Virus record (IMG/VR): IMGVR_UViG_3300021963_000021
Span: 62,001 to 126,000 of that record
DNA length: 64,000 nucleotides
Strand: one strand, 5' to 3'
A program made the position numbers and the translations under genes. Of this stretch, positions 1 through 15,316 are shown one piece after another. Every line of letters begins with the position of its first letter. Position 1 is the first letter of the stretch. The notes below the pieces were generated by a model. That model ran no database searches, was not told the DNA's origin, and saw only the letters and a program-made list of their open reading frames with translations.

Positions 1-482
1 GTACCGCAGAAGCTGCCTGCTATAAAGCAGCAATAAGGAGCAGTACCTGTAGTACAATAACTTGTACCACCGCGGCCACCTTGAGCACACATACAACCGT
101 TAGTTGTACTGCTAAACCAACAGGCCTGTGTAGGATCCGAACAACCACGGAAACATAATCCGTCTGTGTTACCGCAGCTAAATCCCACTGTTCCACAGAT
201 TTTACAGCCAGTGGCCACGGCGAAAGAACGTTTAGCATAAGCGCCAGGATTACCCGGAAGTCCAGCGCCGCAGCAGCACATACGAGCACCACTACCACCA
301 GCACCCCATAATTCTAATGTTACACAACCTGCGCTAGGCGCTGTCCAGCAAAATCCTGTACAGAAATTTGTTCTTACGTTACCTGGGCTCCATGCCCAAA
401 CACGACCTTGTTCGAGGTTTTCCTCTTCATCTGCGATGAAGTTTAATTTTGTTCTTATTAATCCTCTAAAACTTGTAGGCAT
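1..482 (-). CDS. Cys/Gly-rich protein, paralogue of 484..1458 (runs off the window edge); putative fibre-tip/adhesin
   Basis: Not in ORF track (no stop in window). Hand translation from ATG at 482: MPTSFRGLIRTKLNFIADEEENLEQGRVWAWSPGN...LELWGAGGSGARMCCCGAGLPGN...GCMCAQGG, colinear with 484..1458. Confidence 0.85.
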   Translation of the reverse strand, partial: MPTSFRGLIRTKLNFIADEEENLEQGRVWAWSPGNVRTNFCTGFCWTAPSAGCVTLELWGAGGSGARMCCCGAGLPGNPGAYAKRSFAVATGCKICGTVGFSCGNTDGLCFRGCSDPTQACWFSSTTNGCMCAQGGRGGTSYCTTGTAPYCCFIAGSFCG

Positions 483-483
483 C

Positions 484-1458
484 TTAGAATCCCTCGATAA
501 ATTTAATTCTGATCATACCGTGTCCGCCTCGGCGTCCTTGATCTCTAACACCTGGACACGGAGCTCCTGCTGATCCTGGATGTCCTGGAGGTATATGTCC
601 AGAACAACCTTCGTTTTCATAACAGCCGCAACCACCACCGAAGCCCCAGTTATATGCGAACGGAATACCTGAGTTTGGTTTTTTACTTGCTGCTGACAGC
701 GCAGAAACGTGTTGGTGTGCGCCTTGACCGGACCAGTTTGAGAATTCGTTACCATCTTCTGTGGTAAACACAGCAACACCACCGCATTTAGCATATTGTC
801 CCGGTGGAATGGCTACATGATAGTGGAAGGAACATGGACATTGTGGTAAGCACCCAGCAAATAGCGTACAGCTAAAACCACCGCAGCGATTAACGTCACC
901 GCCAAAACCACAGCCAATCCAAGCACCGCCGAAGTAGTTACAGATCAAACCACAGTTATCGTTGTATGGACCACTGAAACAGAACCCTTGGTTGACAAAG
1001 CAACAGAACAAGGATGTGCCTGTAGAACACATCTGTCTACCGCCCAAACCACCTTGAGCACACATACAACCGCTTGCTCCGCAGTTTCCGTACCAATATA
1101 ACCCTGAGGCATCCGAACAGCCTTTAAAACATAGTCCTTCGTTACCACAGGCATAACCCACTGAACCGCAGATAAAGCAACCTGCGTTCATTCTTATTGT
1201 TTTCTTAGCATAGCCGCCTGCGTTACCTGGCAATCCGCCACCGCAGCAGCACATACGAGCACCACTACCACCAGCACCCCATAGCTCAATCACAGCAGTA
1301 CCGCAGGTAGGGGCAATCCAGCACATGGTAAACTGTGAAAAGTCGTTGCCTGGTGTATAAACCCAAACTCTTCCTCTTTCTAAATTTTCTTCAGCGCCTG
1401 CTGAGGTATAGAAAGAGTTAGTCTTGGTTCCTATCAGGCTTTTAAATGATGTTGGCAT
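484..1458 (-). CDS. Cys/Gly-rich protein (about 30 Cys in 324 aa), putative virion fibre-tip/adhesin
   Basis: WGAGGSG and C-terminal GGHGMIRIKF motifs of phage glycine-rich fibre domains; CCC motif; lies at the end of the fibre operon. Confidence 0.6.
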   Translation of the reverse strand: MPTSFKSLIGTKTNSFYTSAGAEENLERGRVWVYTPGNDFSQFTMCWIAPTCGTAVIELWGAGGSGARMCCCGGGLPGNAGGYAKKTIRMNAGCFICGSVGYACGNEGLCFKGCSDASGLYWYGNCGASGCMCAQGGLGGRQMCSTGTSLFCCFVNQGFCFSGPYNDNCGLICNYFGGAWIGCGFGGDVNRCGGFSCTLFAGCLPQCPCSFHYHVAIPPGQYAKCGGVAVFTTEDGNEFSNWSGQGAHQHVSALSAASKKPNSGIPFAYNWGFGGGCGCYENEGCSGHIPPGHPGSAGAPCPGVRDQGRRGGHGMIRIKFIEGF

Positions 1459-1500
1459 ATTGTTCTCGCTTCCTGTAAGTTGTGAATATCGCTCGCATCA

Positions 1501-1833
1501 TTAAGCCGATGATACAATCCATCCGTAGTTTGATCCTGTGTACACTAGTGTGATAATAGATCCGTTAATGTCTATTGTTAGATCGTCAGCAATATTCTGT
1601 ATCTTAGCACCATTTCTAGCAACAGTGATGTTGTTAGTAGCTGCTGATGCGCCAATATCAATGATCTGAATAGTGTCATTCAAAAACAGTGTGTTTGATG
1701 CCGGCAGCGTTATGGTAAATGCTGTGCTTGAAGAATTTGCTAAAATTCTGTCGTTTACTGAAGCGTTGAAGGTATTACTAACTTCACGTATAGTAGTACC
1801 TGCTGTTCCAGTTGTTGTGATATATCTTCCCAT
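1501..1833 (-). CDS. Small virion protein, stand-alone copy of a common tail-fibre/gp9-gp10-like domain
   Basis: AFTITLPAS...IQIID...TNNITVARNG...TLVY...GW pattern is common in phage fibre proteins; TAAATA upstream. Confidence 0.55.
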   Translation of the reverse strand: MGRYITTTGTAGTTIREVSNTFNASVNDRILANSSSTAFTITLPASNTLFLNDTIQIIDIGASAATNNITVARNGAKIQNIADDLTIDINGSIITLVYTGSNYGWIVSSA

Positions 1834-1858
1834 TTAAGTCCCCTATGGAATATTTATT

Positions 1859-2179
1859 TTATAACGTAGATGTTTCAAGTCCGAACGCTACGGCACTTAT
1901 GTTTGCTTGGTTACTGTAAACCACCAAAACTTTGCCTGCGTCCATGACTATACCAGTTCTTTCAAGCACACCTTTACCTAAAAGTTCTGTGTCGTATTCT
2001 ATCCATTCAGCGTTTCCTGGTGTTGCTGTAGTAGCAATCGCCATCCTGATGTTTGTAGCTTGGTTAGCTCTGTTACAGAGCGATACCGAAACCACCGCAA
2101 AAGTATCTGCCGGGCAGGTATACAACGTTGTGTTTGTTGCTGCTGCTAGGTCTTGAGCTCCTAATCTTCCTGTTGCCAT
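1859..2179 (-). CDS. Small beta-rich virion protein (fibre partner family, paralogue 1)
   Basis: LYTCP...VSLCN...ERTGIVM pattern shared with 14987..15316 and 27036..27398; AGGAG-like SD. Confidence 0.6.
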   Translation of the reverse strand: MATGRLGAQDLAAATNTTLYTCPADTFAVVSVSLCNRANQATNIRMAIATTATPGNAEWIEYDTELLGKGVLERTGIVMDAGKVLVVYSNQANISAVAFGLETSTL

Positions 2180-2190
2180 TTAAATCTCCA

Positions 2191-5100
2191 TTATCCTTGT
2201 AAGAACAAATTCATTGCTACTGGGTAGCCATCAATACCACGAGTAAATTCAAGTTTTGTGTTAACCGTAATTTTGAACCCAGTAGTTGTTGTGATCGTAG
2301 ACCCCGATACAAATACCGAACCTGCGGTAAGTGTATTTACGTTCAAAGTACTCGAACCAGAACCAATTTGTGAAGCAATATACGCTTTAATAGCTCTCTG
2401 TGTCGGGATCACTGTATCCGAATCAGCTGTAAAGAACGGATCTGTACTGAATTCAGTGATTGTCGCACCACCTGTGCCCAATTCTACCGATCCTAGCTGC
2501 AGTTCCTGTAGACCAGCTAGGTTAAACGCACTGGCATTCAAGCTAGCTGTACCAGTTGCCTGTTCAATGGTAAACAGATCGCCAACACGGAAATTACCGT
2601 CTTGGTCGGTTGATGTAAAGAACACACGTCCACCGCCACTTTCCACTGTTTCTGAGTCTTGATCTGGGTCAGTGTATGGTAGCCCCGGATAGTTTGTGCT
2701 GGTAAAGTTCCCAGTACCAATGTCCAAAAAGTCGTGTCCAGTTAAACGACACTGTGAATATCTGATTCTAGTTTCAAAACTTTCTTCATGTGCTGGTGCT
2801 TCGCTGATCGTCAACGCCGGGCTAATTTGTAATCTAGCAGTATATGGGCCTGTTCCAGCTAGGTTAGTAACTGTAACCAGCTTGTAATAGTTATTAGGCA
2901 AGCTGGAAAATACTACGTTAGACCCTGCTACAGGCACGCTGTAAAGATCTTTAACATCAACATAACCACCAGGTTGGTAGAAATCAGCATATCCGTCGCC
3001 GGCTACTGTTGATGTAGCAGTAACCCATAGTGTACCTCTGTTGTTGAATGTCGGATTACCCAACGCACCTCTGCCTGTTCTAACAGTATGCGGTGCTTCA
3101 ACGGTGTTGTTAGGATCTGTGATTGTCATTGTTGGAGCACTTGCATAACCGCTACCTGGCTCTACAATTCTAATCTGTGTGATTTTTCCATCAGTTATAG
3201 AACATCTTGCCTGTGTAGTAGCACCGGCTACTACATATCTTCCTGTTGTTCCTGTTGTATTGCTGATCAGTGCCCAACGAGGTGTCCAGTTTGTGTTTCC
3301 TAGAGCAGGTTTAGCGTAACGTCCACTGGTTACAGTTCTAGTAGACCAAACTATACCGTCTGGTGAAGTCCAAATTGAAGTACCTGCGGAATCTATACGT
3401 GTTCCCAAGAACACACCTTGACCATAAGAAACTCTGTTTGCGCCCGGAGGGCTAGAAACTGTGGTCCAAGTAGTACCATTAATACTATAAGCAGCCGCAG
3501 TACCTGTTGAGTTTACCGCAACAAATCTATTATTTCCAAATGTCACGCTAGACCATGTTGTGCTTGCTGGCATAGTAGCAGTGACCCAAGTAATACCGTC
3601 TAAACTGTAACCTGCTCCGTTTGTACCAGTAGCTACAGCAACAAACTTGCCTGCGCCATAAGTGATAGAAGTCCATGTAGTCACAGAGTTTGGCAACGGA
3701 TTAGCACCGTTTGCCCATGTAGTTCCGTTTGTAGAAATCACCGGAGTAGCAGAATCGCCCCTGACCCCAATAAATCTACCATTACCAAACGCCACAGCAT
3801 TGTAGGTTCCAGTCTGTGGCAACGAAGCAGTTGTCCATGTTTCACCACCGTTTGTTGAGTATGCTGCTGTCGTTGAACCTGTATTTGGCAATGCTACTGT
3901 ATACACAGTAGTTGATATCGTTCCACTAGCTACACTGGACCATGCCTGAGCAGCTGGCAATGTGGCGCTGGTCCATGTCACAGCATCTCGACTGTACATA
4001 CCCGAGCTTCCGCTTACTGGTACAGCAACATAGTTGCCACCACGGCCGTAGCCAGTATAGGTAAATCCTGTAATCACTCCGGCAGGCGATGTGACATTTG
4101 TAACTTTAATAGTTAGATTGTTAGTTGTAGCAGTACCATTTAAGCTGGTACCTGCGATTGTTAAAGTATTTCCGACGGCATAACCAGTACCACCGGCATT
4201 TAATGTAACAGTATATACTAGCCCAACCCTAACAACATCAAAAGTCGCCAGTGTGCCTGCACCGCCGGTGGCTGCTACTGCGCTATGACTAGATCTTGTC
4301 TGTACATACGCTACTTCGTTTACCCCAACAGTCACAGGTAGTGTTCCGGTTACAGTGTCAGTTAATGTAGGAGCAGTAAATGTTAATCTTGGCTCTATTA
4401 CATATTGTGTAGAAGCGTCAGGTGCTGTAATTGTTGTGCCAGGGACACTGTGATCCCAGCCTGCTGTACCTGTCGATTCTTTGTAGACCTGTGCTACTTT
4501 GGTACCACTGTTATAAGAGTTAATATATCCAAACTGTGATTGACCAGTACCTGATGTTAGGAATATTCTCATTCCAACATATGCTGAACTGGTATTTCCA
4601 TCTGTGGCTGCTAGTGTGATTGAAGTAGAAGATCCAGTTTGTGCTACGTTTTCAACGCTGATATAATCTGCGCCACCGTAGTTATCTGCTGGGTCGGTTA
4701 GTCTTACTTCAAATACAGCATTGTCACGTACTTCGTTGCCTGTAGTATCAGCATTGATACCAGCACCGTTGAACGTGTACGTTGCGCTGGTATAGTCACT
4801 GCCAGCATTCAAGAACTCAACACGCTGTATTGCGCTGTTATTGGTGATAACTTTTGCGATTGCTGCTTCTTCAAATCTGTTGTTTACTGTGCCTGTGACT
4901 GCTGTTTCTGTAGGATCAACGCCTTCGGACACACAACCAAATGTACCATAAGAACTGTTACCATTGGTAGCACGTATCTTACCACCGTTTTCAGCTAGGT
5001 AACCAATGTGTCCATAATATGAGAACACAGAAACAAGCTCTGTTCTTGCTAGGTTGGTACACCATACACCAATACCATCACTTAGTACCTGTGTAAAGTC

Positions 5101-8100
5101 GTTGGCAACTACTGATTTATTACCGCCACCATGTAGATTTCCATCGATCATTAGACCAACGCAGGCAGTACCAAAAGTCGTAACGTTCTGTACATAACAA
5201 GATCTTGTGGTAATCCATGCTCTAGTGTCGCCTGTGCCCCATCCTGGGTCAAGAGATACATAAGCACCTGCGGTAGGACGTTTTGTACCATACGCATTAA
5301 CCGCACCTAGTGTGCCTGTTAATCCCTGTACTGTGCAGTTACGTAAGCCAGTGCTGTTTCTAACCAAGAACATGTTCTGTAATAGAGAACCAGTTACACC
5401 GTTGACATACAATTTTGCTGCTGTCAGTGTTGCGTAATTGCCTGTGTATATCAAATCATATTTGAGAGCGTCGATATACTCACTGACATCACGAGCGCAG
5501 GCTGCTAGAGTATATGTGTAACTAGGATACGCATTCGCGATGTAAGCGTGTATTTCAGCTATGATAAATGATCTATTCAATTCTAACTGTCTTACCGCAG
5601 CATAGACATCGTAAGCCGACACAGGAGCAACTGTTCCTGACATACTAGGAGCAGAACCAGAAGAATTAACATAGTAATTGATGTAGTCGTATGCGTTCTG
5701 TACTAATCCCTGTGCTAATGTGCCTTGTGTGGCTGTGGCAAACGGTTTAGTTTGACTCTGTGTCAACGTATTAGGATTAGAACCTGTGGTTGTTTTGGTT
5801 ACTGTCGAACCTTGTATTATTGTTGTAACTATTGCTTTCAGTCTTGTTAACGCATCAAGACTCTTGGCAACATCACCTACTCCAATTTGACTCGGCGCTG
5901 GTCTAATATTTGTAGATCTTAATTCGTCTCCGACTACTGCTGTATTGATAGGTACAACAATAGGCAGTGTTTCGTAGAATACACCAGTCTTAACCAGTAT
6001 TGTTCTTTGAGGTAATACTTCAACTGGAATATTTGTAGAAGTTCCGGCCAGTACGTTTACATATACTATGTCTTTTAAATCAGCTAACTGATCTAACGCA
6101 TCTTGTTCGGCAGTATAGCTAATATCTTGTATTTGTAATATTCTATTGCCAACAGTTATACCATTCAATGTTTGATAGTTTGCTGCCGGAGGAGTATTAG
6201 TCAACACCGCAGCAATAGCCACTGTGTTAATCGCATATTGTAATGCCGCTACAGTTTCCTGTTCTTGGCCTAGAGAATAAACGTTAGGAGCATTATTAAT
6301 GTATTCTAATGTAGCTCTTCTTGTGTTTGCGTTGCCGCCTTGACGAACGTCTTTGATCAACGCATCAATGATATATCCTACATCTCGTTCGCATTTAGTT
6401 TTGTCATAGGTAAATCCAGACACGAACGGTGAGATATTATTTGTTCTTTGGTAATCGATCCATTCAACAGTTTCACGTTGTATAAATTGTCTATTGATTT
6501 CTAATAGATATGCTGCCTGTGGATTTCTAGCACCTTTTTCTATTTGCTGGCAGGCGTATTGTATGGTATTCCATGGCTTGTCTAAGGTTATGCCCCAAGT
6601 TGGAGCAGGACTGTCAGTGCCAGCAGTATCAACATAGTACAGCTGATCAATTAATCCCCAATACTTCCACTGCGGAGCACTGGCGTTACTGACTACTAGT
6701 ACCTGACCATCAGATCCGATTGGCAGTCTTGTTGGTCCTGCGCCACCATAATAAACGATATCGCCTTGTGTAGTTAAAACGTTAACTTCACTACCGACTG
6801 ATAATACATTCCAATAAGTGCCAGTAACATCAACATCTGGTCTTGTTACTAGAGTTCCTACAGTTAATGTCGAACCATCATCACCCTCTGAATGGTGAGC
6901 ATTTACACAGATATAGCTGTTAGGACCGTATCTAACAGCATCTCCTAGCATGTAATCGTAGTCATCTCTCCATTGTCCTAACCAACGGATACCGCTGTTT
7001 AGTCTTGACCAGTAGCTTGGATTCGCTGGGTGGGCAGTAACTGTTACAGTCATTGACCCTGATGATGTCTGTACATCAACTGGTGTAGACCCATTTTCTA
7101 AAACACGAACGGTAAATTGCGTACTGCTAGGTACACTGTTTACATAATAGGTAACGTTATTTTGTATGTTACCAAATGTTGTGCCACCGAAGCGCACACT
7201 CATTCCTACTACAAAACCAGTAGTATCGCCTACAGTTATTCTTTTTGTAGCAACATCTGTGGCTGTAGCAGTTGCGGTAATATTAGGTACATCAACAACA
7301 GCGATGTAGGTATATCCGTTTAGTCTTACTACATCTCCGACTTTATAGTCTAATGTGTAATCCCAATCGTTTTGTAATTTGAAACCAGTAGTAAACAGAT
7401 CCCAATTCTGTGATCCTGTCACTGCTGTTGTAGGTTTAATATTGCTGTGGTTAGTCTTTGCTATGTAAGCATAGCCACCGTAGGTAATGACGTCACCTGG
7501 TTGATAAATTGTTGCCGAATTCCATGAGCTCTCAAACTCAAGACCTTCAACAAATCTAGCCCAGTATCCAGAATCTTCGTCATCTTCGAATGTAGTTGTC
7601 TGAGATGATGTGTGCTTTGCTGTACAGATCCACAAACTAGCACCGTATTTGACAACATCGTTGATTTTGTAGTCGACGTTATAGTCATCCCAGTCACCAA
7701 GATATTCGATACCTTGGTTAAAATAATCCCATTTTCCTTGATCATCTTCAAGACCTAGAGTAAATGTAGCTGCTGATGTATGACCTTCGTTACAGACATA
7801 TGTTGTACCACCAAACTTAACTACGTCATTGATTTTATATCGATAGCTAGTAGTCCAATCAGTTTTCCAATCAAACGCCTCTGAATAGATATCCCATTTA
7901 GCTAAATCTTCTGCTATTCCAGGAGTTACTCTGCCTAGCCCCTCTAGACCTTGTGTGATAGTAGAAGCTGATGAATGTCCTAGATTACATAGGTAAAGAT
8001 TACCGCCGTATTTGACGATATCGTTTAATTTGTATCTCGTTGAAGTAGTCCAGTCGCCCTTCCAGTCAAATGACTCGGCAAATTGATCCCACTTTGAAAG

Positions 8101-8451
8101 TGTGCTATCGCCTAGATCTAGATCTGCTTCAAGCCCAAGTGCTAGCGTGGCAGCGGAGGTGTGCCCAACTGTACAAAGATAGACTTGCCCACCGTATTTT
8201 ACTATGTCATTTTTATAGTAAACTTCTCCAGTGACCCAATCGCCTCTCCACTTTGTTCCGTCCGAGATTTGATTCCATCTTGCTGGTACGTTTTCAGCGT
8301 CTACATAAAAGTCCGTATCTGCTACGTGACCGATAACGCAGATGAAAACTTTACCGTTGACTCGTACTACGTCATCTTTGACGTAGGTGGTCCCGGCAAC
8401 CCATTCGCCTTTCCAAATAAAGCGTATTCTACCTAATTTAAACTCAGCCAT
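2191..8451 (-). CDS. Giant virion fibre/structural protein (~2086 aa): W-x-G-x-W/DxVKYGG repeats, beta-helix region, Asp-box propeller
   Basis: N-terminal CBM5/12-like repeats (WKGDW...NDIVKYGG..Y.C...HTS), S-x-D/N-G-x-T-W Asp-boxes, C-terminal GHDFLDIGTG...STDQDGNFRVG. ATG at 8451 (TTG at 8454 is an alternative). Confidence 0.7.
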   Translation of the reverse strand: MAEFKLGRIRFIWKGEWVAGTTYVKDDVVRVNGKVFICVIGHVADTDFYVDAENVPARWNQISDGTKWRGDWVTGEVYYKNDIVKYGGQVYLCTVGHTSAATLALGLEADLDLGDSTLSKWDQFAESFDWKGDWTTSTRYKLNDIVKYGGNLYLCNLGHSSASTITQGLEGLGRVTPGIAEDLAKWDIYSEAFDWKTDWTTSYRYKINDVVKFGGTTYVCNEGHTSAATFTLGLEDDQGKWDYFNQGIEYLGDWDDYNVDYKINDVVKYGASLWICTAKHTSSQTTTFEDDEDSGYWARFVEGLEFESSWNSATIYQPGDVITYGGYAYIAKTNHSNIKPTTAVTGSQNWDLFTTGFKLQNDWDYTLDYKVGDVVRLNGYTYIAVVDVPNITATATATDVATKRITVGDTTGFVVGMSVRFGGTTFGNIQNNVTYYVNSVPSSTQFTVRVLENGSTPVDVQTSSGSMTVTVTAHPANPSYWSRLNSGIRWLGQWRDDYDYMLGDAVRYGPNSYICVNAHHSEGDDGSTLTVGTLVTRPDVDVTGTYWNVLSVGSEVNVLTTQGDIVYYGGAGPTRLPIGSDGQVLVVSNASAPQWKYWGLIDQLYYVDTAGTDSPAPTWGITLDKPWNTIQYACQQIEKGARNPQAAYLLEINRQFIQRETVEWIDYQRTNNISPFVSGFTYDKTKCERDVGYIIDALIKDVRQGGNANTRRATLEYINNAPNVYSLGQEQETVAALQYAINTVAIAAVLTNTPPAANYQTLNGITVGNRILQIQDISYTAEQDALDQLADLKDIVYVNVLAGTSTNIPVEVLPQRTILVKTGVFYETLPIVVPINTAVVGDELRSTNIRPAPSQIGVGDVAKSLDALTRLKAIVTTIIQGSTVTKTTTGSNPNTLTQSQTKPFATATQGTLAQGLVQNAYDYINYYVNSSGSAPSMSGTVAPVSAYDVYAAVRQLELNRSFIIAEIHAYIANAYPSYTYTLAACARDVSEYIDALKYDLIYTGNYATLTAAKLYVNGVTGSLLQNMFLVRNSTGLRNCTVQGLTGTLGAVNAYGTKRPTAGAYVSLDPGWGTGDTRAWITTRSCYVQNVTTFGTACVGLMIDGNLHGGGNKSVVANDFTQVLSDGIGVWCTNLARTELVSVFSYYGHIGYLAENGGKIRATNGNSSYGTFGCVSEGVDPTETAVTGTVNNRFEEAAIAKVITNNSAIQRVEFLNAGSDYTSATYTFNGAGINADTTGNEVRDNAVFEVRLTDPADNYGGADYISVENVAQTGSSTSITLAATDGNTSSAYVGMRIFLTSGTGQSQFGYINSYNSGTKVAQVYKESTGTAGWDHSVPGTTITAPDASTQYVIEPRLTFTAPTLTDTVTGTLPVTVGVNEVAYVQTRSSHSAVAATGGAGTLATFDVVRVGLVYTVTLNAGGTGYAVGNTLTIAGTSLNGTATTNNLTIKVTNVTSPAGVITGFTYTGYGRGGNYVAVPVSGSSGMYSRDAVTWTSATLPAAQAWSSVASGTISTTVYTVALPNTGSTTAAYSTNGGETWTTASLPQTGTYNAVAFGNGRFIGVRGDSATPVISTNGTTWANGANPLPNSVTTWTSITYGAGKFVAVATGTNGAGYSLDGITWVTATMPASTTWSSVTFGNNRFVAVNSTGTAAAYSINGTTWTTVSSPPGANRVSYGQGVFLGTRIDSAGTSIWTSPDGIVWSTRTVTSGRYAKPALGNTNWTPRWALISNTTGTTGRYVVAGATTQARCSITDGKITQIRIVEPGSGYASAPTMTITDPNNTVEAPHTVRTGRGALGNPTFNNRGTLWVTATSTVAGDGYADFYQPGGYVDVKDLYSVPVAGSNVVFSSLPNNYYKLVTVTNLAGTGPYTARLQISPALTISEAPAHEESFETRIRYSQCRLTGHDFLDIGTGNFTSTNYPGLPYTDPDQDSETVESGGGRVFFTSTDQDGNFRVGDLFTIEQATGTASLNASAFNLAGLQELQLGSVELGTGGATITEFSTDPFFTADSDTVIPTQRAIKAYIASQIGSGSSTLNVNTLTAGSVFVSGSTITTTTGFKITVNTKLEFTRGIDGYPVAMNLFLQG

Positions 8452-8503
8452 CAATCACTCCGCATATGATGTTAGTATATTTATCCATACCCAAAAACTG
8501 TCC

Positions 8504-11500
8504 TTAACCCAAATCTCTACCAGTTTCTTGCCAATCTAGCTGCGAATTAAAGCTATCTGCAAACATACTCCATGCTGTCATATATCCACCCGCACCCTTT
8601 TTAAACAATACTGGCACTGTAATTTGATCCCTAATACCTGTGGTATTTCCGATACTGTCTGGCCCTATTGATACTGTACCAGCTATCAAACGACCTGTAG
8701 CAGCATCAGATCCACCTCCCGAAATACGTCTACCAATATAGGCTTTGATCGCTTTCTGCGTCGGCACTATATTGTTTGAATCTGCGGTAAATGTAGCATC
8801 TGTAGAAAATTCTCGGATAACTACACCAGTACCGCCCACTCTAATACCACCTAATCTAATTTCTGATAAACCGCTTAGGTCAAAATAATCAGCACTAATA
8901 GTAATAACACCCGTGGCCTGTTCAACCGCAAACAATTCTCCTACTCGGAAATTACCATCTTGGTCGGTCGATGTATAGAAACAGCGACCACCGCCTCTGT
9001 AATAAATTTCTTTGTCTGGTTGGAAATTGTTAACAGCAGTGTAAGGATAATTTGTATCTATAAAATTACCAGTACCAATTTCCAAAAAGTCGTGTCCAGT
9101 TAATCGAACTTGACTGTATTTTTCACGTATCAATACCTCAGTGCCGTTTACAGGCGCATTGGTTCTTGTAAATGCTGGACTTACTGTAACTGCTATTCTA
9201 GCATTTGGAACTGAACCGCTCACAAGGGCAACAGTTAACACCCTGTAAACAGTGTCGGTGGATCCGTCTGGGGCTACAATTGAAGTTGTTCCGGTGCCAA
9301 CTGACACATAAACGTTAGCACCACCTATAATGCTAGTGCCAGCCGTTAACGGATAAGGTCTTTCTTTCCATATTAGACCGTCCGTTGATGTAACAAATTC
9401 ATCAACGTTATTGCCAACTACAATAAATTTTTTGTTGGCAAATGTAGCAGATCTCCAATCACCAACAATAGGCAATGTACCTTCAGTCCAGGTAGTTCCA
9501 GCATCGTCAGTCCACGCATAGGTATCACTACCAGATGCAAAGACTACAAACAAATTTTTACCATATGTAACTGCGGTCCATGATTGTGTTGATGACAGTG
9601 CTATGCCGTTCCAATTTATACCGTCGTTTGATGTAGCTCCGACTGTGCCTCCTGATGCTACGGCCATAAACAGACCGCTGCCATAAGTTACTGCTTCCCA
9701 GTTTGCTGACGAAGGCATAGAAGATTCTAGCCAGGTTGCGCCACCGTCGATAGAATATGCTGCTTTGTTAGATCCAGAAGCAACAGCAACAAATGTACCG
9801 CCGCCAAATGCTAAAGAAGTCCATGTTCTTCCTGCTGGTAATGTTGAAGACGACCAAGTAATTCCAGTTGTACTGTAGGCTGCGTTAGTTGATGATTTAG
9901 CTATTGCCGCATAGTATCCGTTGCCGTAGGCCACGCTAGTCCATGCTGCCGATGTTGGCATTGTAGCTGATGACCATGAAGTACCGTCTGTAGAATATGC
10001 TGCCTGTGTAGTTGGTGCTCCGGTAGTGCCTGCTACTGCAACAAATCTAGTACCATAGGTTACTCCTGACCAATTATTGTTAGACGGCATATTGTTTTCC
10101 ACCCAACTGATTAAATCTAATGTAAGGTTAGCACCTGTTCTTGGCAGTCTTGTTACGTTATCTAATATCAAAGCCTTTCCTACAGGATATATGTCAGCGT
10201 AACCATCACCGCTGACTGTTACAATAGTTGTAGAAGTTTTATATCCAAGACCTCTATTGGTAAATGTTGGGTTTCCTAACACACCTACACCGACACGACA
10301 TTCTATATTCACCTCTGAGGTGTTGTTTGGGTCTGTGAGGACCGCTGTGGGCGTTGTTAGATATCCGCTACCTGGCTCCCATAGTTTTATTCTAGATACT
10401 CTACCGCCATTAATTTCCACACGGCCTTTGGCTGTAGCACCATAGTTAATGAGATTACCATTGGTTCCTGTGCTAGGTATAGTAATCCAAGCACCATTAT
10501 TATTTGGATTACCAAATGCTGCCGATACTCGTCCTAAATTACCAGTAACTGTTTTTGCTACCCAATAATTACCATCATCGGAAAATGCCACCGTAGCTGT
10601 TGTAGATGTTGATACTGCTAAAAACTGTCCCTGTCCGTAGGATACATGATTCCAGTTGCTTGATACCGGCATCACTGTAGCATACCAATTAATACCGTTG
10701 GTACTTACTGCTGCTGCGCCAGTTCCTGAAGCTACGGCTACAAATGCTCCGTTACCAAATGTTATAGATGTCCATGTTGCTGTTGCTGGCAGTGTTGTTG
10801 CTGTCCATGTCTGGCCGCCATCTGTTGAATAGGCCGCAGCGTTGCTGGTAGTTCTTATAGCTACAAATTTTCCGGCACCGTAGGCTACTGATGCCCATAT
10901 TCCGGTACTTGACAGCGTCGATGAATTCCAACTTAATCCGTCTGCGCTGTATGCTGCTGTTGTTCCTGAAGATGCTGATATAGCAACATAAGCGCCGCCA
11001 CCATAGGCCACCGAAGACCAGTTAGTGGTTGTGCCAGGCATCGATCCTGTACTCCAAGAAGTTCCGTTAGCACTCACTGATACCTGTGCTGGACTTCCTA
11101 CGTTTGTTGCGTTTGTAGCTACTGCTACAAAGTTTCCACCGCCATATGTTATAGAACTGTATGCGCCACCAGCAGGAACTGGCAGAGTTGCTGTTAATAG
11201 CGATGACCCGTTATAGACTGACGCAGTACCAGATGCTCCTAACAGCACCCATACTCCTGCCCCAAACGCTGAGTCTACCCAAGTTTGACTAGGTACTGTC
11301 AACACTGTGTTAGAATAATCTGGTGTGGTAAATGTTATTCTAGGTTCAATACGATATACAGATGTAGTATCTAGTAATGCTATATTTTGTGTGGCACCGT
11401 TAACATGCTGGAATCCTGCCTTGTGGACGTACATTAACCCTAAGCTGGTTGTTATGGATTCCGCAGAACCCCCTGGTAGTGTACTCACAGCAAACTGTGT

Positions 11501-14500
11501 GCTTGAAAAATTAGCAGCAATAACGTAATATAGTTGTCCTGTAGATACACCGCCAAACACACCACCAGCAGTTCCGTTAACTGTGATATTAGCCGTAGTC
11601 AGTGAATATGTAGATCCAGTTGGAGTTTGTCTTAATTTGATTTTTGTTTGACTAACAATCTCGTCAACATAATAGGTAGTAGCACCTGAAATATTACCAA
11701 TCGACACTTCAAACTGTATAGGCATACCTACAGCCAAGCCAGTTGTGCTGTATAATGTCACAGTGTTAGCACCGACTAATGAACCGGTAGCAGTTACAAC
11801 AATCGTTTCATAACTGAAATAAACTGGCATACCAACATATAGACTTGATGTGTCAGCTACTGTAATTAGATTATTTGTAGAACTAGAAACTGTGGCATTT
11901 AATCTTGTAAAATTTTCACAGGCTATAGCTACTTCTTTTGATACTGTATTATAAGCGACTATCTGTCCATACTGACCAGTTCCTGTACCACTTTGTATAA
12001 TCAATCTTAGACCATAATAAATGTCTATGTCGTTTTGATCACCTGTGGCAATAGTGATAGAATAAGGATTTCCTGCTTGAGCATTGTTACCAGTTGATAT
12101 GTAACTACCACCGCCAATACTGCCTGTGGAATCAGCAGGATCTAAAACTCGAGCTTCAAAAATAGCGTTGTCTCGGAATTCGTCACCGATTACTGCTGCG
12201 TTAACACCTGATCCTGAAAACGCATAAGAAGCTGTTGTATAATTTTCGCCAGCATTTGAAAATTCTAGTTTTAAAATTTCATCATTGGCTTCGCCGGAGA
12301 ATGCGCTAACTACCTGTGCTTCTCTAGTTCGGTTATTAATAGTTCCAGGCACTGGTAATTCGTCGTCATCAACACCTTCTGCTACACAACCGTATGTACC
12401 ATAAGAACTGTTACCGTTAGTAGCACGTATCTTGCCACCATTCTCAGCTAGATAACCAATGTGTCCATAGTATGAGAACACTGAAACAAGTTCTGTTAGA
12501 CCTTTATTAGTACACCATACACCAATGCCGTCTGATAAGACCTGTGTAAAGTCGTTGGCAACGATAGATCTATTGCCCCCATTATGTCTAGCACCGTCAA
12601 TTTTAAGACCAGTACAGCCGTTACCAAAAGTTGTAACGTTCTGTACATAACAGGATTTTGTATTAATCCATACAGATGTATCGTCAGGACCATACCCAGG
12701 ATCTAGAGATACATAGGCACCTGCGGTAGGACGTTGAGTTAGGTACTCATTGAACGGGCCCAACGTACCATTGAGACCTCGCAATGTCATGTTACGAATA
12801 CCTGTTCCGTTGTTTACATGGAACATGTCTTCAGTTTGTGTGCTGATAGTTGGTTGTATAATAGTACTGCGTAGTTCTTCACCTACTAGAGCAACATCTC
12901 TAGGAACTTTGATAGGTAATATTTCTGTATAAACACCTACCTTAATAAAAATAGTAGCAGGACCAGATATACTGCCACAGGCATATTTTACAGTTCTCCA
13001 AGGAGCATTAATAGTTGTTCCGTTTCCGGGCTGATCAACACCATCTGGACCTACATAATATATTTTTTCAATGAACTGGAAAGTGTCCCAATCAATTGAA
13101 TTAGATGAATTAATTTTTAAAGCCTGGCCTTCTGTACCAATAGGCAACCGTGTGTTACCTATAGAACTACCATCTTCTTTGATTCCAAATAGTTTTATAT
13201 CGCCTTGCTCTCTCAATGATCCCCATTGATCGCCTAGAGCAACTAGTGTCCAAATTCCGCCGGCACTGGTATCTGGTCTAGTTGACGGTGAAGAAAGATG
13301 CTGAGTTAAGCAACGATAGGTGTTACTTTCAAATGTCAGCATATCACCGATGGCATATTCAAAATTATCTTGCCAACGCCCCTGCCATTTTTCTCCAGGA
13401 ACTAAGAGTTCCCAATTAATAGAATCAATGTTAGGATCGCTGGCTACATCGGCTGTAGCTACATATAATTGACCCTGACGTCTTAGTACATCGCCTACCT
13501 GATAAGAAGTCGCGGCGGTCCATTCGCCTTGTATCTTAAATCCCTTAGTCAACAGTTCCCAAGAATCAACGGAACTATCGCCTAACGCAGTTGACGGAAT
13601 AACATTTATGTTATTGATTAACGCATAGTATGAATAGCCGCCGTACTTGACTACATCACCTTTTTGATATATTGTAGTGCTGTTCCATGTATTTTCATAT
13701 TCAAACCCTGGAACATAAATGATCCATTTTGTAAGATCAAAATCAACAGCAGAAGTATGATGCTGCGAGCAGATCCATATACCTGCTCCCCATTTCACAA
13801 CATCGTTTACTTTGTATCGATAGCCGTCAATAGGTGTAGGTGAGGTTACTTCAGGTACCCAATTGCCTTTGTAATCTATACCATCATTTACAATTTCCCA
13901 ACTGCTTTGATCGTCTTCTAATCCTGCTTCGGCATCAGGTGCTGAAGTATGTGCTACTATACAACGATAAACAATTCCACCGTACTTGACAATGTCATTT
14001 AATTTATATTTTGTATCAGTGGTCCAATCACCTTTCCACTTTTCAGATAATACTACAGTTTCCCAAGAACCAAAGTTGCCTTCGAGACCAGCAGTTGACG
14101 CAGCACTGGTATGAGCAATTATACAGCGATAGACAATACCTCCCCACTTGACTACATCATTTTCAGAGTATTTGGTATTTTGTGTCCAATTACCTTTCCA
14201 TTCTTGACCTCTAGCATAAGATGCCCATTTAGGTTGGTCAGATTCTAGTCCGGAAAGAGCGTTATTCGATGTGTGTCTTAGCACACAGATATAAACAATG
14301 CCGTTGTATTTTACAAGATCACCAGTGTTATAAAAAGTAGTCGGTTGCCAATCACCTTTCCACTCGTAGCCGTCGAACATCAATTCCCACTGAGGGTCTG
14401 CTGTAATAGGTACTGTGGTAAGATCCTGTTTTTCTAAATCGGTATAAAAATTAACATCCGATGTATGACCGTGTAGACAAACATAGCTTTTACCGCCATA

Positions 14501-14590
14501 TCTAACTATGTCGTCTTTTACATAATTGTGACCAGCAGCCCAGTCACCTAACCATGTAAATTTTATTCTACTTAATTTAAATTCAGCCAT
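8504..14590 (-). CDS. Giant virion fibre/structural protein (2028 aa), paralogue of 2191..8451 with two Asp-box propeller regions
   Basis: Same MAEFKL.RI.F.W start, same repeats, near-identical VANDFTQVLSDGIGVWCTN...GHIGYLAENGGKIRATNGNSSYG block. Confidence 0.7.
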   Translation of the reverse strand: MAEFKLSRIKFTWLGDWAAGHNYVKDDIVRYGGKSYVCLHGHTSDVNFYTDLEKQDLTTVPITADPQWELMFDGYEWKGDWQPTTFYNTGDLVKYNGIVYICVLRHTSNNALSGLESDQPKWASYARGQEWKGNWTQNTKYSENDVVKWGGIVYRCIIAHTSAASTAGLEGNFGSWETVVLSEKWKGDWTTDTKYKLNDIVKYGGIVYRCIVAHTSAPDAEAGLEDDQSSWEIVNDGIDYKGNWVPEVTSPTPIDGYRYKVNDVVKWGAGIWICSQHHTSAVDFDLTKWIIYVPGFEYENTWNSTTIYQKGDVVKYGGYSYYALINNINVIPSTALGDSSVDSWELLTKGFKIQGEWTAATSYQVGDVLRRQGQLYVATADVASDPNIDSINWELLVPGEKWQGRWQDNFEYAIGDMLTFESNTYRCLTQHLSSPSTRPDTSAGGIWTLVALGDQWGSLREQGDIKLFGIKEDGSSIGNTRLPIGTEGQALKINSSNSIDWDTFQFIEKIYYVGPDGVDQPGNGTTINAPWRTVKYACGSISGPATIFIKVGVYTEILPIKVPRDVALVGEELRSTIIQPTISTQTEDMFHVNNGTGIRNMTLRGLNGTLGPFNEYLTQRPTAGAYVSLDPGYGPDDTSVWINTKSCYVQNVTTFGNGCTGLKIDGARHNGGNRSIVANDFTQVLSDGIGVWCTNKGLTELVSVFSYYGHIGYLAENGGKIRATNGNSSYGTYGCVAEGVDDDELPVPGTINNRTREAQVVSAFSGEANDEILKLEFSNAGENYTTASYAFSGSGVNAAVIGDEFRDNAIFEARVLDPADSTGSIGGGSYISTGNNAQAGNPYSITIATGDQNDIDIYYGLRLIIQSGTGTGQYGQIVAYNTVSKEVAIACENFTRLNATVSSSTNNLITVADTSSLYVGMPVYFSYETIVVTATGSLVGANTVTLYSTTGLAVGMPIQFEVSIGNISGATTYYVDEIVSQTKIKLRQTPTGSTYSLTTANITVNGTAGGVFGGVSTGQLYYVIAANFSSTQFAVSTLPGGSAESITTSLGLMYVHKAGFQHVNGATQNIALLDTTSVYRIEPRITFTTPDYSNTVLTVPSQTWVDSAFGAGVWVLLGASGTASVYNGSSLLTATLPVPAGGAYSSITYGGGNFVAVATNATNVGSPAQVSVSANGTSWSTGSMPGTTTNWSSVAYGGGAYVAISASSGTTAAYSADGLSWNSSTLSSTGIWASVAYGAGKFVAIRTTSNAAAYSTDGGQTWTATTLPATATWTSITFGNGAFVAVASGTGAAAVSTNGINWYATVMPVSSNWNHVSYGQGQFLAVSTSTTATVAFSDDGNYWVAKTVTGNLGRVSAAFGNPNNNGAWITIPSTGTNGNLINYGATAKGRVEINGGRVSRIKLWEPGSGYLTTPTAVLTDPNNTSEVNIECRVGVGVLGNPTFTNRGLGYKTSTTIVTVSGDGYADIYPVGKALILDNVTRLPRTGANLTLDLISWVENNMPSNNNWSGVTYGTRFVAVAGTTGAPTTQAAYSTDGTSWSSATMPTSAAWTSVAYGNGYYAAIAKSSTNAAYSTTGITWSSSTLPAGRTWTSLAFGGGTFVAVASGSNKAAYSIDGGATWLESSMPSSANWEAVTYGSGLFMAVASGGTVGATSNDGINWNGIALSSTQSWTAVTYGKNLFVVFASGSDTYAWTDDAGTTWTEGTLPIVGDWRSATFANKKFIVVGNNVDEFVTSTDGLIWKERPYPLTAGTSIIGGANVYVSVGTGTTSIVAPDGSTDTVYRVLTVALVSGSVPNARIAVTVSPAFTRTNAPVNGTEVLIREKYSQVRLTGHDFLEIGTGNFIDTNYPYTAVNNFQPDKEIYYRGGGRCFYTSTDQDGNFRVGELFAVEQATGVITISADYFDLSGLSEIRLGGIRVGGTGVVIREFSTDATFTADSNNIVPTQKAIKAYIGRRISGGGSDAATGRLIAGTVSIGPDSIGNTTGIRDQITVPVLFKKGAGGYMTAWSMFADSFNSQLDWQETGRDLG

Positions 14591-14613: not shown

Positions 14614-14621
14614 TATTTATA
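14614..14621 (-). promoter_or_regulatory. T4-type late promoter TATAAATA
   Basis: Exact T4 late consensus upstream of the 2028-aa gene. Related TAAATA sites lie at 1851, 8478, 21297, 26175, 29584, 29862, 33779, 34687 and 44073 (-), and 41626, 48942 and 54645 (+). Confidence 0.75.
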
Positions 14622-14976
14622 TACCAGTTGGATAGTTATAGTTTTCGTTGATCCTAACAACCAACTGTCCGTCATCGTCTATGTAATAAAATAGATCTCT
14701 GCCATCCCATCTGTATTGCTCGTACTTGATATTAGCATACACTAACTCGTGTTGTACGCTACGGCCTTCTGTGAAATCTATCCCAGTTTCAAAATCATTA
14801 TAATTGTCTTCAGATGCTCCTGGGTTATTAACGGTTATAGCATCATCAGCTCTTAACTGATCTAATTTACCCATGTAGATCTCGCCGTTGTCTGTTCTTC
14901 TCAGGCCATAGAAATATCTAGGAGTTCCTTGTCCTAACAAATTTTGTAAATCTACATCACCAACATAATAGGTCAT
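14617..14976 (-). CDS. Hypothetical virion-associated protein (119 aa)
   Basis: ORF tightly packed in the structural operon with AGGA SD. Confidence 0.6.
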   Translation of the reverse strand: MTYYVGDVDLQNLLGQGTPRYFYGLRRTDNGEIYMGKLDQLRADDAITVNNPGASEDNYNDFETGIDFTEGRSVQHELVYANIKYEQYRWDGRDLFYYIDDDGQLVVRINENYNYPTGI

Positions 14977-14986
14977 GATATTTTCC

Positions 14987-15316
14987 TTATACTAACTCGA
15001 CATAACTGACAACAACATCTACAGAAGAAGCAGTATCTGCTTGTGCGTATATGGCATTGTTTTCTGCCAATACTAATTTTTCTCCGCCGTTGACTATTCG
15101 TGCGCTCTGAAAAGGCGGCAGTGTGATATCTTTGATATAATATCCCATAGTAGAACTAGCATCTTCTATCAAAACACTAACACGAACTGTAGCAGTAGTT
15201 AGATTACATAAACTAAAACCAATTACAGTAATGCGACTGGTAGGAGTAGTTTCTATAACCTGCGTTCTAGTTGTGCCTAGCTCATTAATAATCTTATTTC
15301 TAAAAAACGTTGCCAT
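14987..15316 (-). CDS. Small beta-rich virion protein (fibre partner family, paralogue 2)
   Basis: MATFFRNK...GFSLCN...GGEKLVL...DVVVSYVE pattern; directly follows a giant fibre gene. Confidence 0.6.
   Translation of the reverse strand: MATFFRNKIINELGTTRTQVIETTPTSRITVIGFSLCNLTTATVRVSVLIEDASSTMGYYIKDITLPPFQSARIVNGGEKLVLAENNAIYAQADTASSVDVVVSYVELV

What the first reader, a model, noticed from the sequence alone, without database searches (positions are those of the whole stretch)
1..1458. Tandem extremely Cys-rich glycine-rich proteins at the end of the fibre operon
Seen: about 30 Cys in 324 aa, including CCC, CC, CxC and CxxC, with positions largely conserved in the adjacent paralogue. Established: cytoplasm-assembled phage proteins are normally Cys-poor, and glycine-rich domains form adhesins such as T2-type gp38. 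Inference: a disulfide-locked or multi-metal-binding fibre tip, possibly needing phage-encoded redox or metal-loading enzymes outside this window.
Basis: partly seen in the sequence, partly recalled or inferred. Interest (0 to 1): 0.6.

Follow-up and report, generated by a model that had tools for sequence, protein, structure and literature searches.

The report
Cysteine-packed fibre-head proteins, in triplicate
Three neighbouring genes of an uncultured 364-kb aquatic phage encode tail-fibre head proteins of a known fold that carry about 30 conserved cysteines each; relatives sit unstudied in cultured ocean cyanophages, where their chemistry could be tested.

Summary
Window 484-1458(-) encodes a 324-aa protein with 30 Cys (9.3%) and 65 Gly (20%). 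Window 3-482(-) is the start of a 332-aa paralogue with 32 Cys. A third paralogue (320 aa, 33 Cys) lies just outside the window. Long ORFs in the window average 0.7% Cys. All three paralogues share 25 Cys positions, and 24 Cys columns are at least 88% conserved in 152 homologues.

The AlphaFold model (pLDDT 80.7) has the TNF-like plus glycine-rich fold of the Pam3 tail fibre (Z 15.4), the Bxb1 tail tip and ALK/LTK. It does not match gp38. The family is PHROG 4205, function unknown. The same module occurs in the cultured cyanophages S-CAM1 and P-SSM2: fibre, two small proteins, Cys-rich genes, a ~214-aa protein, a glycosyltransferase and a carbamoyltransferase.

In the jumbo-phage clade every complete locus (62 of 62) has exactly three copies in fixed order. 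They form three old orthologous groups, which suggests a heterotrimeric head.

Whether the cysteines form disulfides or bind metal is unresolved, because no model coordinates were available. No thioredoxin or DsbA was found; the Erv1 search was uninformative. This is a new variant of a known kind, of moderate interest.

The parts
484..1458 (-). Paralogue 1 (324 aa, 30 Cys, 65 Gly): TNF-like plus glycine-rich fibre-head protein, PHROG 4205
1..482 (-). Paralogue 2, first 160 of 332 aa (18 of its 32 Cys); the rest lies before the window start (genome 61484-62482). Paralogue 3 (320 aa, 33 Cys) is wholly outside the window at genome 60508-61470
1375..1458 (-). N-terminal about 28 residues of paralogue 1: conserved M-P-T-S-(F/L)-K-x-L motif and a low-confidence short helix. 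Candidate docking or trimerisation segment (inferred)
   Evidence: the same motif is in the S-CAM1 proteins
1210..1287 (-). Most conserved block, residues 58-83: E-(I/L)-W-G-A-G-G-S-G-A-x-M-C-C-C-G-x-G-x-P-G-N-x-G-x-Y. First glycine-rich motifs with the CCC triplet
   Evidence: also aligned in S-CAM1 and P-SSM2
649..798 (-). Residues 221-270: the longest of the most variable stretches and the region of lowest model confidence. Candidate receptor-contact loops (inferred). Other variable or insertion-prone loops lie at residues 121-130 and 161-180
499..534 (-). C-terminal R-G-G-H-G-x-(I/V)-R-I-(K/R)-F closing strand, a typical end of glycine-rich domains
480..495 (-). Junction of paralogues 1 and 2: GAGGG (495-491), stop TAA (486-484), one base, ATG (482-480). 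This layout fits translational coupling
1501..1833 (-). 110-aa protein resembling C-terminal pieces of tail-fibre proteins; 39% identical to its S-CAM1 counterpart. Part of the conserved module
1859..2179 (-). 106-aa protein resembling tail-fibre protein pieces; 49% identical to its S-CAM1 counterpart. Part of the conserved module
2191..8454 (-). 2087-aa giant fibre protein with five CBM5/12 repeats starting at its N-terminus, directly upstream of the module

Best explanation
The three tandem genes encode the distal, host-recognising head of a tail fibre. Each protein is a TNF-like beta-sandwich into which glycine-rich extended strands are woven, as in the Pam3 fibre gp24. A short conserved N-terminal segment would dock it to a fibre or bundle it with its partners. 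The three paralogues most likely assemble 1:1:1 into one heterotrimeric head, in the way C1q A, B and C chains do, having evolved from a homotrimer like that of Pam3. The roughly 24 conserved cysteines, many of which flank the glycine-rich motifs, most likely act as covalent staples. The protein would fold in the reducing cytoplasm, perhaps helped by the conserved 214-aa neighbour. Neighbouring thiols would then oxidise to disulfides once the virion is released into oxygenated water, locking a loop-rich domain that otherwise rests on backbone hydrogen bonds. Shown here: composition, conservation, fold, synteny and the fixed triplet. Inferred: virion location, heterotrimer, disulfide chemistry and the chaperone role.
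For: Fold: AlphaFold model with pLDDT 80.7. It matches Pam3 fibre 7ypx_A at Z 15.4 over 202 residues and the Bxb1 tail tip at Z 12.5, both phage tail parts, and ALK/LTK at Z 8-9. No other chain scores Z 5 or more among 48,161, and the next tier is TNF/C1q/BAFF trimeric heads. Viral models: 157 matches with E <= 0.001; the listed top 50 are mostly 'glycine-rich domain' proteins, tail fibre proteins and giant-virus collagen-like proteins. The Atlas points to PF21722 Gly_rich_2. Context: the genes always lie between giant fibre genes, and the whole module is shared with cyanophages S-CAM1 and P-SSM2. Triplet: 62 loci have three copies, every two-copy locus is cut by a contig end, and positions 1, 2 and 3 form three old orthologous groups. 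A separate lineage has a single copy. Paralogues 1 and 2 are separated by one base. The closest solved relative is a trimer (PMC9608196). Cysteines: 24 columns are at least 88% conserved in 152 proteins. Cys columns are the best conserved residue class (0.82, against 0.55 for residues other than Cys and Gly). Variable Cys tend to appear in pairs (phi 0.66-0.76) or to move by 1-2 positions. Disulfide networks are known in cytoplasm-assembled phage tails (Pam3, PMC9942802; Milano, PMC10811340). The phage occurs in oxygenated marine, estuarine and fresh waters.
Against: There is no virion proteomics for any family member; I found none in Sullivan 2010 or its supplements. The N-terminal segment is far shorter than the helical bundle that drives Pam3 gp24 trimerisation. 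Cys counts are as often odd as even (75 against 77), which an all-disulfide protein would not show. The paired gains rest on few independent events and are not significant once the tree is taken into account. CC, CCC and CxC motifs also suit metal-thiolate clusters, and conserved Cys in cytoplasm-made proteins often bind metal. The 214-aa neighbour has no structural match to known fibre chaperones. No Pfam model matches the protein.
Confidence: 0.45

Rival explanations
1. Same fibre-head protein, but the cysteines are ligands of several metal ions (zinc, iron or copper thiolate sites or clusters). The metals would be loaded in the cytoplasm and would hold the loops together in place of disulfides.
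For: The proteins have no signal peptide and would be made in a reducing cytoplasm, where conserved Cys commonly bind metal (general knowledge). CC, CCC, CxC and CxxC motifs are present. There is no parity preference in Cys number. 24 conserved Cys would make six four-Cys sites. Phage fibres are known to hold structural metal ions (T4 gp37 iron, gp12 zinc; my own knowledge).
Against: No metal-binding family matches in Pfam or NCBIfam. Few conserved His, Asp or Glu accompany the Cys. Lost Cys are replaced by Arg, Thr, Asn, Pro and the like, never by His; this is weak evidence, because Cys to His needs two base changes. Known fibre metal sites use His, not Cys. The virion lives in oxygenated water, where exposed thiolates tend to oxidise.
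Confidence: 0.25
2. The three paralogues do not form one complex. Each is a separate receptor-binding head, homotrimeric or monomeric, that caps a different one of the several giant fibres and gives the phage three specificities.
For: The module holds at least five giant fibre genes (2608, 2087, 2028, 1951 and 1613 aa). S16 gp38 binds its fibre as a monomer, as cited in PMC9942802. P-SSM2 has two copies rather than three, separated by another gene. Phages with several fibres and several receptor-binding proteins are common (my own knowledge).
Against: Independent receptor-binding genes usually vary in number and order. Here the number and order are fixed in 62 of 62 complete loci, at down to about 50% identity. 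All three keep the same N-terminal motif. Paralogues 1 and 2 appear translationally coupled. TNF/C1q-type heads are trimers, and the closest solved relative is one (PMC9608196).
Confidence: 0.35
3. The proteins are not virion parts. They would act inside or on the infected cell, for example as substrates or partners of the adjacent glycosyltransferase and carbamoyltransferase, or as cell-surface modifiers.
For: Sugar-modifying genes always follow the Cys-rich genes, and in cyanophages heptose-synthesis genes follow too. That cluster in P-SSM2 was read as lipopolysaccharide genes (PMC1079782). There is no proteomic proof of virion location.
Against: The fold's only strong solved phage matches are a tail fibre and a tail tip. 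The genes sit inside a row of fibre genes close to the major capsid gene. There is no signal peptide or membrane segment in the sequence.
Confidence: 0.07

Closest known systems
Tail fibre gp24 of freshwater cyanophage Pam3 (PDB 7YPX, 7YFW)
   Same: Best structural match: Z 15.4, 202 aligned residues, rmsd 3.7 A, covering residues 18-324. Same TNF-like sandwich plus glycine-rich lattice. Similar size. A small conserved gene follows it; in Pam3 that gene is the chaperone gp25.
   Different: Only 17% identity and no sequence-level match. The Pam3 papers report disulfides through a single fibre cysteine, Cys28, whereas this protein has 30 Cys. Pam3 has a long N-terminal helical bundle and is a homotrimer from one gene that attaches directly to the baseplate. 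Here the N-terminus is about 28 residues, there are three paralogous genes, and giant fibre genes lie alongside.
PHROG 4205: hypothetical proteins of T4-like cyanophages (S-CAM1 SXBG_00224 to 00226; P-SSM2 PSSM2_304 and 306)
   Same: True homologues: hhalign probability 98.3%, E 1.5e-14, and hmmscan E 8e-8. Same extreme composition (25-36 Cys, 8-12%). Same WGxGGxG...CC(C) and CAxGGxGG motifs. Same module order. Three tandem copies in S-CAM1.
   Different: Very divergent in sequence: S-CAM1 matches the PHROG model at E 1e-95 or better, the window's genome only at 5e-8. The hosts of those phages are cyanobacteria. The window's phage has no psbA, and its capsid protein is nearest to Vibrio phage 2.275.O and the PA5oct group. 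Neither set has a known function.
ALK/LTK extracellular TNF-like plus glycine-rich (TG) domain
   Same: Same overall fold: Z 8-9 over about 147 residues. It is a ligand-binding domain built on polyglycine-type strands.
   Different: It is an animal receptor kinase domain that acts as a ligand-induced dimer. The resemblance is of fold only.
gp38 adhesin of S16/T2-type phages
   Same: A glycine-rich-motif lattice at a fibre tip that recognises the receptor. The Pam3 authors note a local likeness: rmsd 2.7 A over 52 residues (PMC9608196).
   Different: It is not among the best 50 solved matches in either search. It has a different middle domain and is a monomer on a gp37 trimer. It is not Cys-rich as far as I know.
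C1q globular head (A, B and C chains) and other TNF-family trimers
   Same: The beta-sandwich core gives weak matches, Z 4-4.8. C1q is a heterotrimer of three paralogous chains encoded side by side, which is the arrangement proposed here. Giant-virus collagen-like proteins match the model.
   Different: This is an analogy, not membership. The scores are in the range of common arrangements, and the heterotrimer here is untested.
Disulfide networks in phage tails (Pam3 baseplate and fibres; Agrobacterium phage Milano)
   Same: Precedent that virions assembled in the cytoplasm end up with many structural disulfides that affect stability and triggering (PMC9942802, PMC10811340).
   Different: Those are mostly bonds between chains, in proteins with about 2% Cys. 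Here there is 9-10% Cys within one small domain.

Membership tests
TNF-like plus glycine-rich (TG) domain, as in Pam3 gp24, Bxb1 tail tip and ALK/LTK | Three-dimensional fold: a TNF-like beta-sandwich with interleaved glycine-rich extended strands | tested here: met
   Z 15.4, 12.5 and 8-9. These are the only chains at Z 5 or more among 48,161. Foldseek E 2.5e-5.
TNF-like plus glycine-rich (TG) domain, as in Pam3 gp24, Bxb1 tail tip and ALK/LTK | Glycine-rich motifs, with a GGxGG-type first motif after a beta-strand and a closing GGxG-x-hydrophobic strand at the C-terminus | tested here: met
   E-I-W-G-A-G-G-S-G at residues 58-66 and R-G-G-H-G-x-I-R-I-K-F at 309-320; both are conserved.
TNF-like plus glycine-rich (TG) domain, as in Pam3 gp24, Bxb1 tail tip and ALK/LTK | Sequence match to the Pfam model of phage glycine-rich domains (PF21722 Gly_rich_2) | tested here: not met
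   No Pfam family at E <= 1. Only a language-model neighbour cluster carries PF21722.
TNF-like plus glycine-rich (TG) domain, as in Pam3 gp24, Bxb1 tail tip and ALK/LTK | Trimeric assembly at a fibre or tail tip in the virion | not testable with these tools
PHROG 4205 | Significant match to the family profile | tested here: met
   E 7.7e-8 and 5.5e-8 for the two window proteins. The same profile hits three S-CAM1 and two P-SSM2 proteins. hhalign probability 98.3% to S-CAM1.
PHROG 4205 | Conserved gene neighbourhood (fibre, 106 aa, about 110 aa, Cys-rich genes, about 214-240 aa, glycosyltransferase, carbamoyltransferase) | tested here: met
gp38-type adhesin (S16/T2) | Structural match to S16 gp38 (PDB 6F45) | tested here: not met
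   Not among the best 50 rows of either structural comparison. The tools warn that an unlisted family is not excluded.
gp38-type adhesin (S16/T2) | Sequence match to a gp38 family model | tested here: not met
   No Pfam, NCBIfam or tail-annotated PHROG match for the Cys-rich proteins.
Disulfide-rich extracellular domain | Conserved Cys in even numbers that pair in space | tested here: inconclusive
   24 conserved Cys columns, an even number. Total counts are odd in 75 and even in 77 proteins. Paired gains are suggestive but not significant on the tree. No coordinates were available to measure distances.
Metal-thiolate (zinc, iron or metallothionein-like) protein | Match to a known metal-binding family, or groups of three or four ligands in space | tested here: inconclusive
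   No family match. The spatial grouping could not be measured.

The most novel reading that the evidence does not exclude
A phage receptor-binding head built as an obligate heterotrimer of three anciently triplicated chains. Each chain would be stapled by about a dozen disulfides, or by metal-thiolate sites, that form only after release, so that host recognition or fibre stability is gated by redox state. Such a head would be shared by a widespread clade of aquatic jumbo phages and, in a divergent form, by marine T4-like cyanophages.
Probability: 0.25. Interest if true: 0.75.

Novelty: new variant of a known kind. Interest (0 to 1): 0.55.

Why it matters
Tail-fibre heads decide which hosts a phage can infect. 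This family occurs in hundreds of aquatic phage contigs and in cultured Prochlorococcus and Synechococcus phages, yet it has no assigned function. A head domain with about 10% cysteine is far outside the norm: whole-proteome averages are 0.7-1.4% in T4, A511 and Milano (PMC10811340). It implies a stabilising or redox- or metal-dependent chemistry that has not been described for receptor-binding proteins. The fixed triplet offers a clean case of a homotrimer turning into a heterotrimer. S-CAM1 and P-SSM2 are in culture, so each of these ideas can be tested directly.

Tried and rejected
- **Complex prediction.** The heterotrimer is therefore untested; this is no verdict either way.
- **Model coordinates.** They are not available in the Python box, so Cys-Cys distances could not be measured.
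- **Searches of cultured phages.** Megablast and tblastn against cultured phages gave nothing at default thresholds. Only a loose tblastn (E up to 10) exposed the cyanophage relatives.
- **Nearest cultured relative by capsid.** Vibrio phage 2.275.O gave no match to the family profile; the tool warns that an empty answer alone shows nothing.
- **Profile search of PDB sequences.** It found nothing real.
- **Pfam and NCBIfam.** Neither gave a family for the Cys-rich proteins.
- **Tree-aware test of paired Cys gain.** It was underpowered: 2-7 independent events per pair. I do not claim covariation as proof of disulfides.
- **The 214-aa neighbour.** It folds with high confidence (pLDDT 95.7) but has no meaningful PDB match: Foldseek E at best 0.29, and VIA Z at most 6.4 on a helical hairpin only. 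The chaperone reading rests on gene position alone.
- **Redox enzymes.** There is no thioredoxin or DsbA family match. There is one glutaredoxin, probably the usual NrdC type (my inference). The Erv1 search was uninformative because its control was silent.
- **Promoter and terminator scans.** Counts were at the level of shuffled sequence.
- **Proteomics.** The supplements of Sullivan 2010 held no entry for the P-SSM2 genes.
- **RNA libraries.** Contigs from three RNA libraries cover the genes, but they cannot prove transcription.
Full report
**What is in the sequence**

On the minus strand, window 484-1458 is an open frame of 324 aa with 30 Cys (9.3%) and 65 Gly (20%). It contains CCC at 70-72, CC at 152-153, CxC at 131/133, 207/209 and 277/279, and CxxC at 94/97. 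Window 3-482 is the first 160 residues (18 Cys) of a second frame that runs off the window start.

The window is bases 62001-126000 of a 363,943-bp IMG/VR virus record that CheckV rates complete. In that record the second protein is 332 aa with 32 Cys. A third paralogue of 320 aa with 33 Cys follows at 60508-61470. The 31 long open frames of the window average 0.7% Cys.

The three paralogues are 53-59% identical overall but share 25 aligned Cys positions. Random placement gives about 3 shared positions for a pair. The nested frames on other phases are by-products of the main frames.

**Conservation**

A word-based protein search found 393 relatives, all about 320 aa, all from metagenomes and all unnamed. 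A scan of IMG/VR found 253 encoding stretches, of which 78 loci were fetched.

In 152 distinct family proteins taken from those loci, 24 Cys columns are at least 88% conserved. In paralogue 1 numbering these are 46, 70-72, 104, 110, 114, 131, 133, 144, 152, 153, 160, 169, 173, 197, 203, 207, 209, 270, 277, 279, 285 and 301. Position 270 is Asn in paralogue 1 itself.

Each protein has 21-48 Cys, with a median of 31. Cys columns are the best conserved residue class (0.82), ahead of Gly (0.78) and residues other than Cys and Gly (0.55).

**Fold**

AlphaFold2 with an 81-sequence alignment gave a confident model (mean pLDDT 80.7, pTM 0.78). Foldseek and two VIA-align comparisons agree:

| Match | Score |
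|---|---|
| Cyanophage Pam3 tail fibre gp24 (7ypx_A) | Z 15.4, 202 residues, rmsd 3.7 A |
| Mycobacteriophage Bxb1 tail tip | Z 12.5 |
| ALK/LTK ligand-binding domains | Z 8-9 |
| TNF, BAFF, C1q and collagen VIII NC1 heads | Z 4-4.8 |

The first three groups are the only chains with Z of 5 or more among 48,161 representatives.

Among predicted viral structures there are 157 matches with E <= 0.001. The best are uncharacterised proteins of Synechococcus phage S-CAM3 and Prochlorococcus phage P-SSM2. Most of the other listed rows are 'glycine-rich domain-containing' proteins, tail fibre proteins and giant-virus collagen-like proteins. The ESM Atlas points to PF21722 Gly_rich_2 as the nearest named family.

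The protein is therefore a TNF-like plus glycine-rich head domain. In Pam3 this domain forms the receptor-recognising end of a trimeric fibre (PMC9608196, PMC9942802).

No sequence model detects the relationship. Pfam and NCBIfam give nothing, and a profile search of PDB sequences gives nothing.

**Family and module**

The only sequence family that matches is PHROG 4205, function unknown (E 8e-8). A loose tblastn then led to cultured T4-like cyanophages.

In S-CAM1 the order of genes is as follows:

1. tail fibre protein
2. 106-aa protein
3. 109-aa protein
4. three tandem proteins of 311, 278 and 299 aa with 36, 31 and 25 Cys
5. 241-aa protein
6. 379-aa protein
7. carbamoyltransferase
8. heptose-synthesis genes

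P-SSM2 has two such proteins (356 and 355 aa, 36 Cys each) in the same setting. PHROG 4205 is exactly this set.

The relationship to the window's proteins is supported by several comparisons:

- hhalign probability is 98.3% to S-CAM1 and 92.9% to P-SSM2.
- The flanking 106-, 110- and 214-aa proteins are 49%, 39% and 24% identical to their S-CAM1 counterparts.
- The 314-aa GT9-like protein matches phrog_8954 at E 1e-136.

The window's phage itself is not an evident cyanophage. It has no psbA. Its Gp23-type capsid protein is closest to Vibrio phage 2.275.O (72.6%), Sinorhizobium phage Phosso, the PA5oct group and large Erwinia phages.

**The triplet**

Of 79 genomes or loci scanned (78 fetched loci plus the window's own genome), 62 have exactly three tandem copies. 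The four two-copy cases and several one-copy cases are cut by contig ends.

A tree of 149 proteins puts gene positions 1, 2 and 3 into three old groups. Position 2 is a supported clade of 47 rows, 44 of them position 2. Position 1 is a clade of 47 rows, 44 of them position 1. Labels are far more clustered than in shuffles.

A separate clade of eight loci has a single copy. Those loci are in another phage lineage, where the gene sits between the capsid region and two giant fibre genes.

Paralogues 1 and 2 are separated by one base, with a GAGGG nine bases before the second start codon. All three keep the same N-terminal motif.

A fixed number and order at about 50% divergence, apparent translational coupling and a trimeric closest relative together suggest one 1:1:1 head, as in C1q. 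This is an inference.

**What the cysteines do**

I could not obtain model coordinates, so the geometry is unknown.

In favour of disulfide staples:

- The conserved Cys number is even (24), and many of them flank the glycine-rich motifs.
- Variable Cys tend to appear together: columns 210/224 and 164/204 have phi 0.76, and 53/86 has phi 0.66.
- Variable Cys also hop by one or two positions, or to a nearby column: 121/123, 181/183, 41/42, 182/197 and 207/210.
- Structural disulfides are documented in cytoplasm-assembled phage tails (PMC9942802, PMC10811340).
- The phage lives in oxygenated waters: marine, estuary, river and lake metagenomes from 16 studies.

Against disulfide staples, or in favour of metal:

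- Total Cys counts are odd as often as even (75 against 77).
- The paired gains come from only 2-7 independent events and are not significant on the tree.
- CC, CCC and CxC motifs also suit thiolate clusters.
- The proteins are made in a reducing compartment.

The genome has no thioredoxin or DsbA family gene and one small glutaredoxin far away. The Erv1 search was uninformative. My estimate is roughly 0.5 for disulfides, 0.25 for metal, and the rest for a mixture or something else.

**Other evidence**

Contigs from three freshwater metatranscriptome libraries cover the genes at near identity. Contigs cannot prove transcription, and DNA may be present in such libraries.

The most variable and insertion-prone stretches are residues 121-130, 161-180 and 211-270. 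These are candidate receptor-contact loops. The blocks 51-80, 131-140, 271-280 and 301-320 are the conserved core.

The 214-aa protein encoded after the triplet folds with pLDDT 95.7 into a beta domain plus a helical hairpin. It has no meaningful solved match. Its position mirrors that of the Pam3 fibre chaperone gp25, but nothing more can be said.

**Verdict**

The fibre-head reading is well supported by fold and context. The gp38 label is not supported.

The cysteine chemistry and the oligomeric state remain open, and both are directly testable in cultured cyanophages. The family is catalogued but unstudied. I rate it a new variant of a known kind, with interest 0.55.

Noticed in passing
outside the window: genome 58818-59762(-) and 56995-58821(-), which are L004:14818-15762 and L004:12995-14821: A GT9-like (heptosyltransferase family) protein and a NodU/CmcH-type carbamoyltransferase always follow the Cys-rich genes. 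In S-CAM1 and P-SSM2, heptose-synthesis genes and a small 'cysteine dioxygenase' cupin follow as well. This suggests that a carbamoylated heptose is put on something in this module, possibly the fibres or heads. A cytidylyltransferase-like gene lies at genome 46641-46910, next to the 2608-aa fibre gene.
   Followed up: partly
outside the window: genome 59841-60485(-), which is L004:15841-16485: A 214-aa protein (3 Cys, 1.4%) is conserved after the triplet, lies between the two copies in P-SSM2, and is duplicated in some loci such as L083, L052 and L076. It folds very confidently (pLDDT 95.7) into a beta domain plus a helical hairpin with no solved match. It may be a fibre chaperone, but only its position supports this.
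   Followed up: partly
window 2191-8454(-), 8504-14590(-), 15322-21177(-), 21315-26156(-): There are four giant proteins of 2087, 2028, 1951 and 1613 aa in a row, plus a 2608-aa one outside the window. The first has five CBM5/12 carbohydrate-binding repeats starting at its N-terminus. That is an unusually large fibre set for one phage.
   Followed up: partly
window 14617-14976(-) and 14987-15316(-): A second pair of small proteins (119 and 109 aa; phrog_8997 and phrog_1276, function unknown) sits between two giant fibre genes. It echoes the 106- and 110-aa pair before the Cys-rich genes.
   Followed up: no
loci L022, L036, L039, L041, L051, L077, L081, L082: A different phage lineage carries a single Cys-rich copy (317-319 aa, 32-34 Cys). 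It lies between a capsid-region gene set and two giant fibre genes, without the glycosyltransferase and carbamoyltransferase. This may be the ancestral one-gene state.
   Followed up: partly
window 29917-31095(-): The Gp23-type major capsid protein is 72.6% identical to that of Vibrio phage 2.275.O and about 69% to the PA5oct group and large Erwinia phages. The genome has no psbA. The host is unknown and probably not a cyanobacterium, even though the fibre-head module is shared with cyanophages. That points to exchange of the module between distant phage groups.
   Followed up: partly
window 1-6000: Near-identical sequence occurs in marine, estuarine, riverine and freshwater metagenomes from 16 studies, and in contigs of three freshwater metatranscriptome libraries. 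The phage is widespread across salinities.
   Followed up: partly
outside the window: genome 301189-301362(-): The only thiol-redox gene found is a glutaredoxin in an 83-aa open frame. It is probably the NrdC type that serves ribonucleotide reductase in T4-like phages (my inference), and it is not linked to the fibre module.
   Followed up: no
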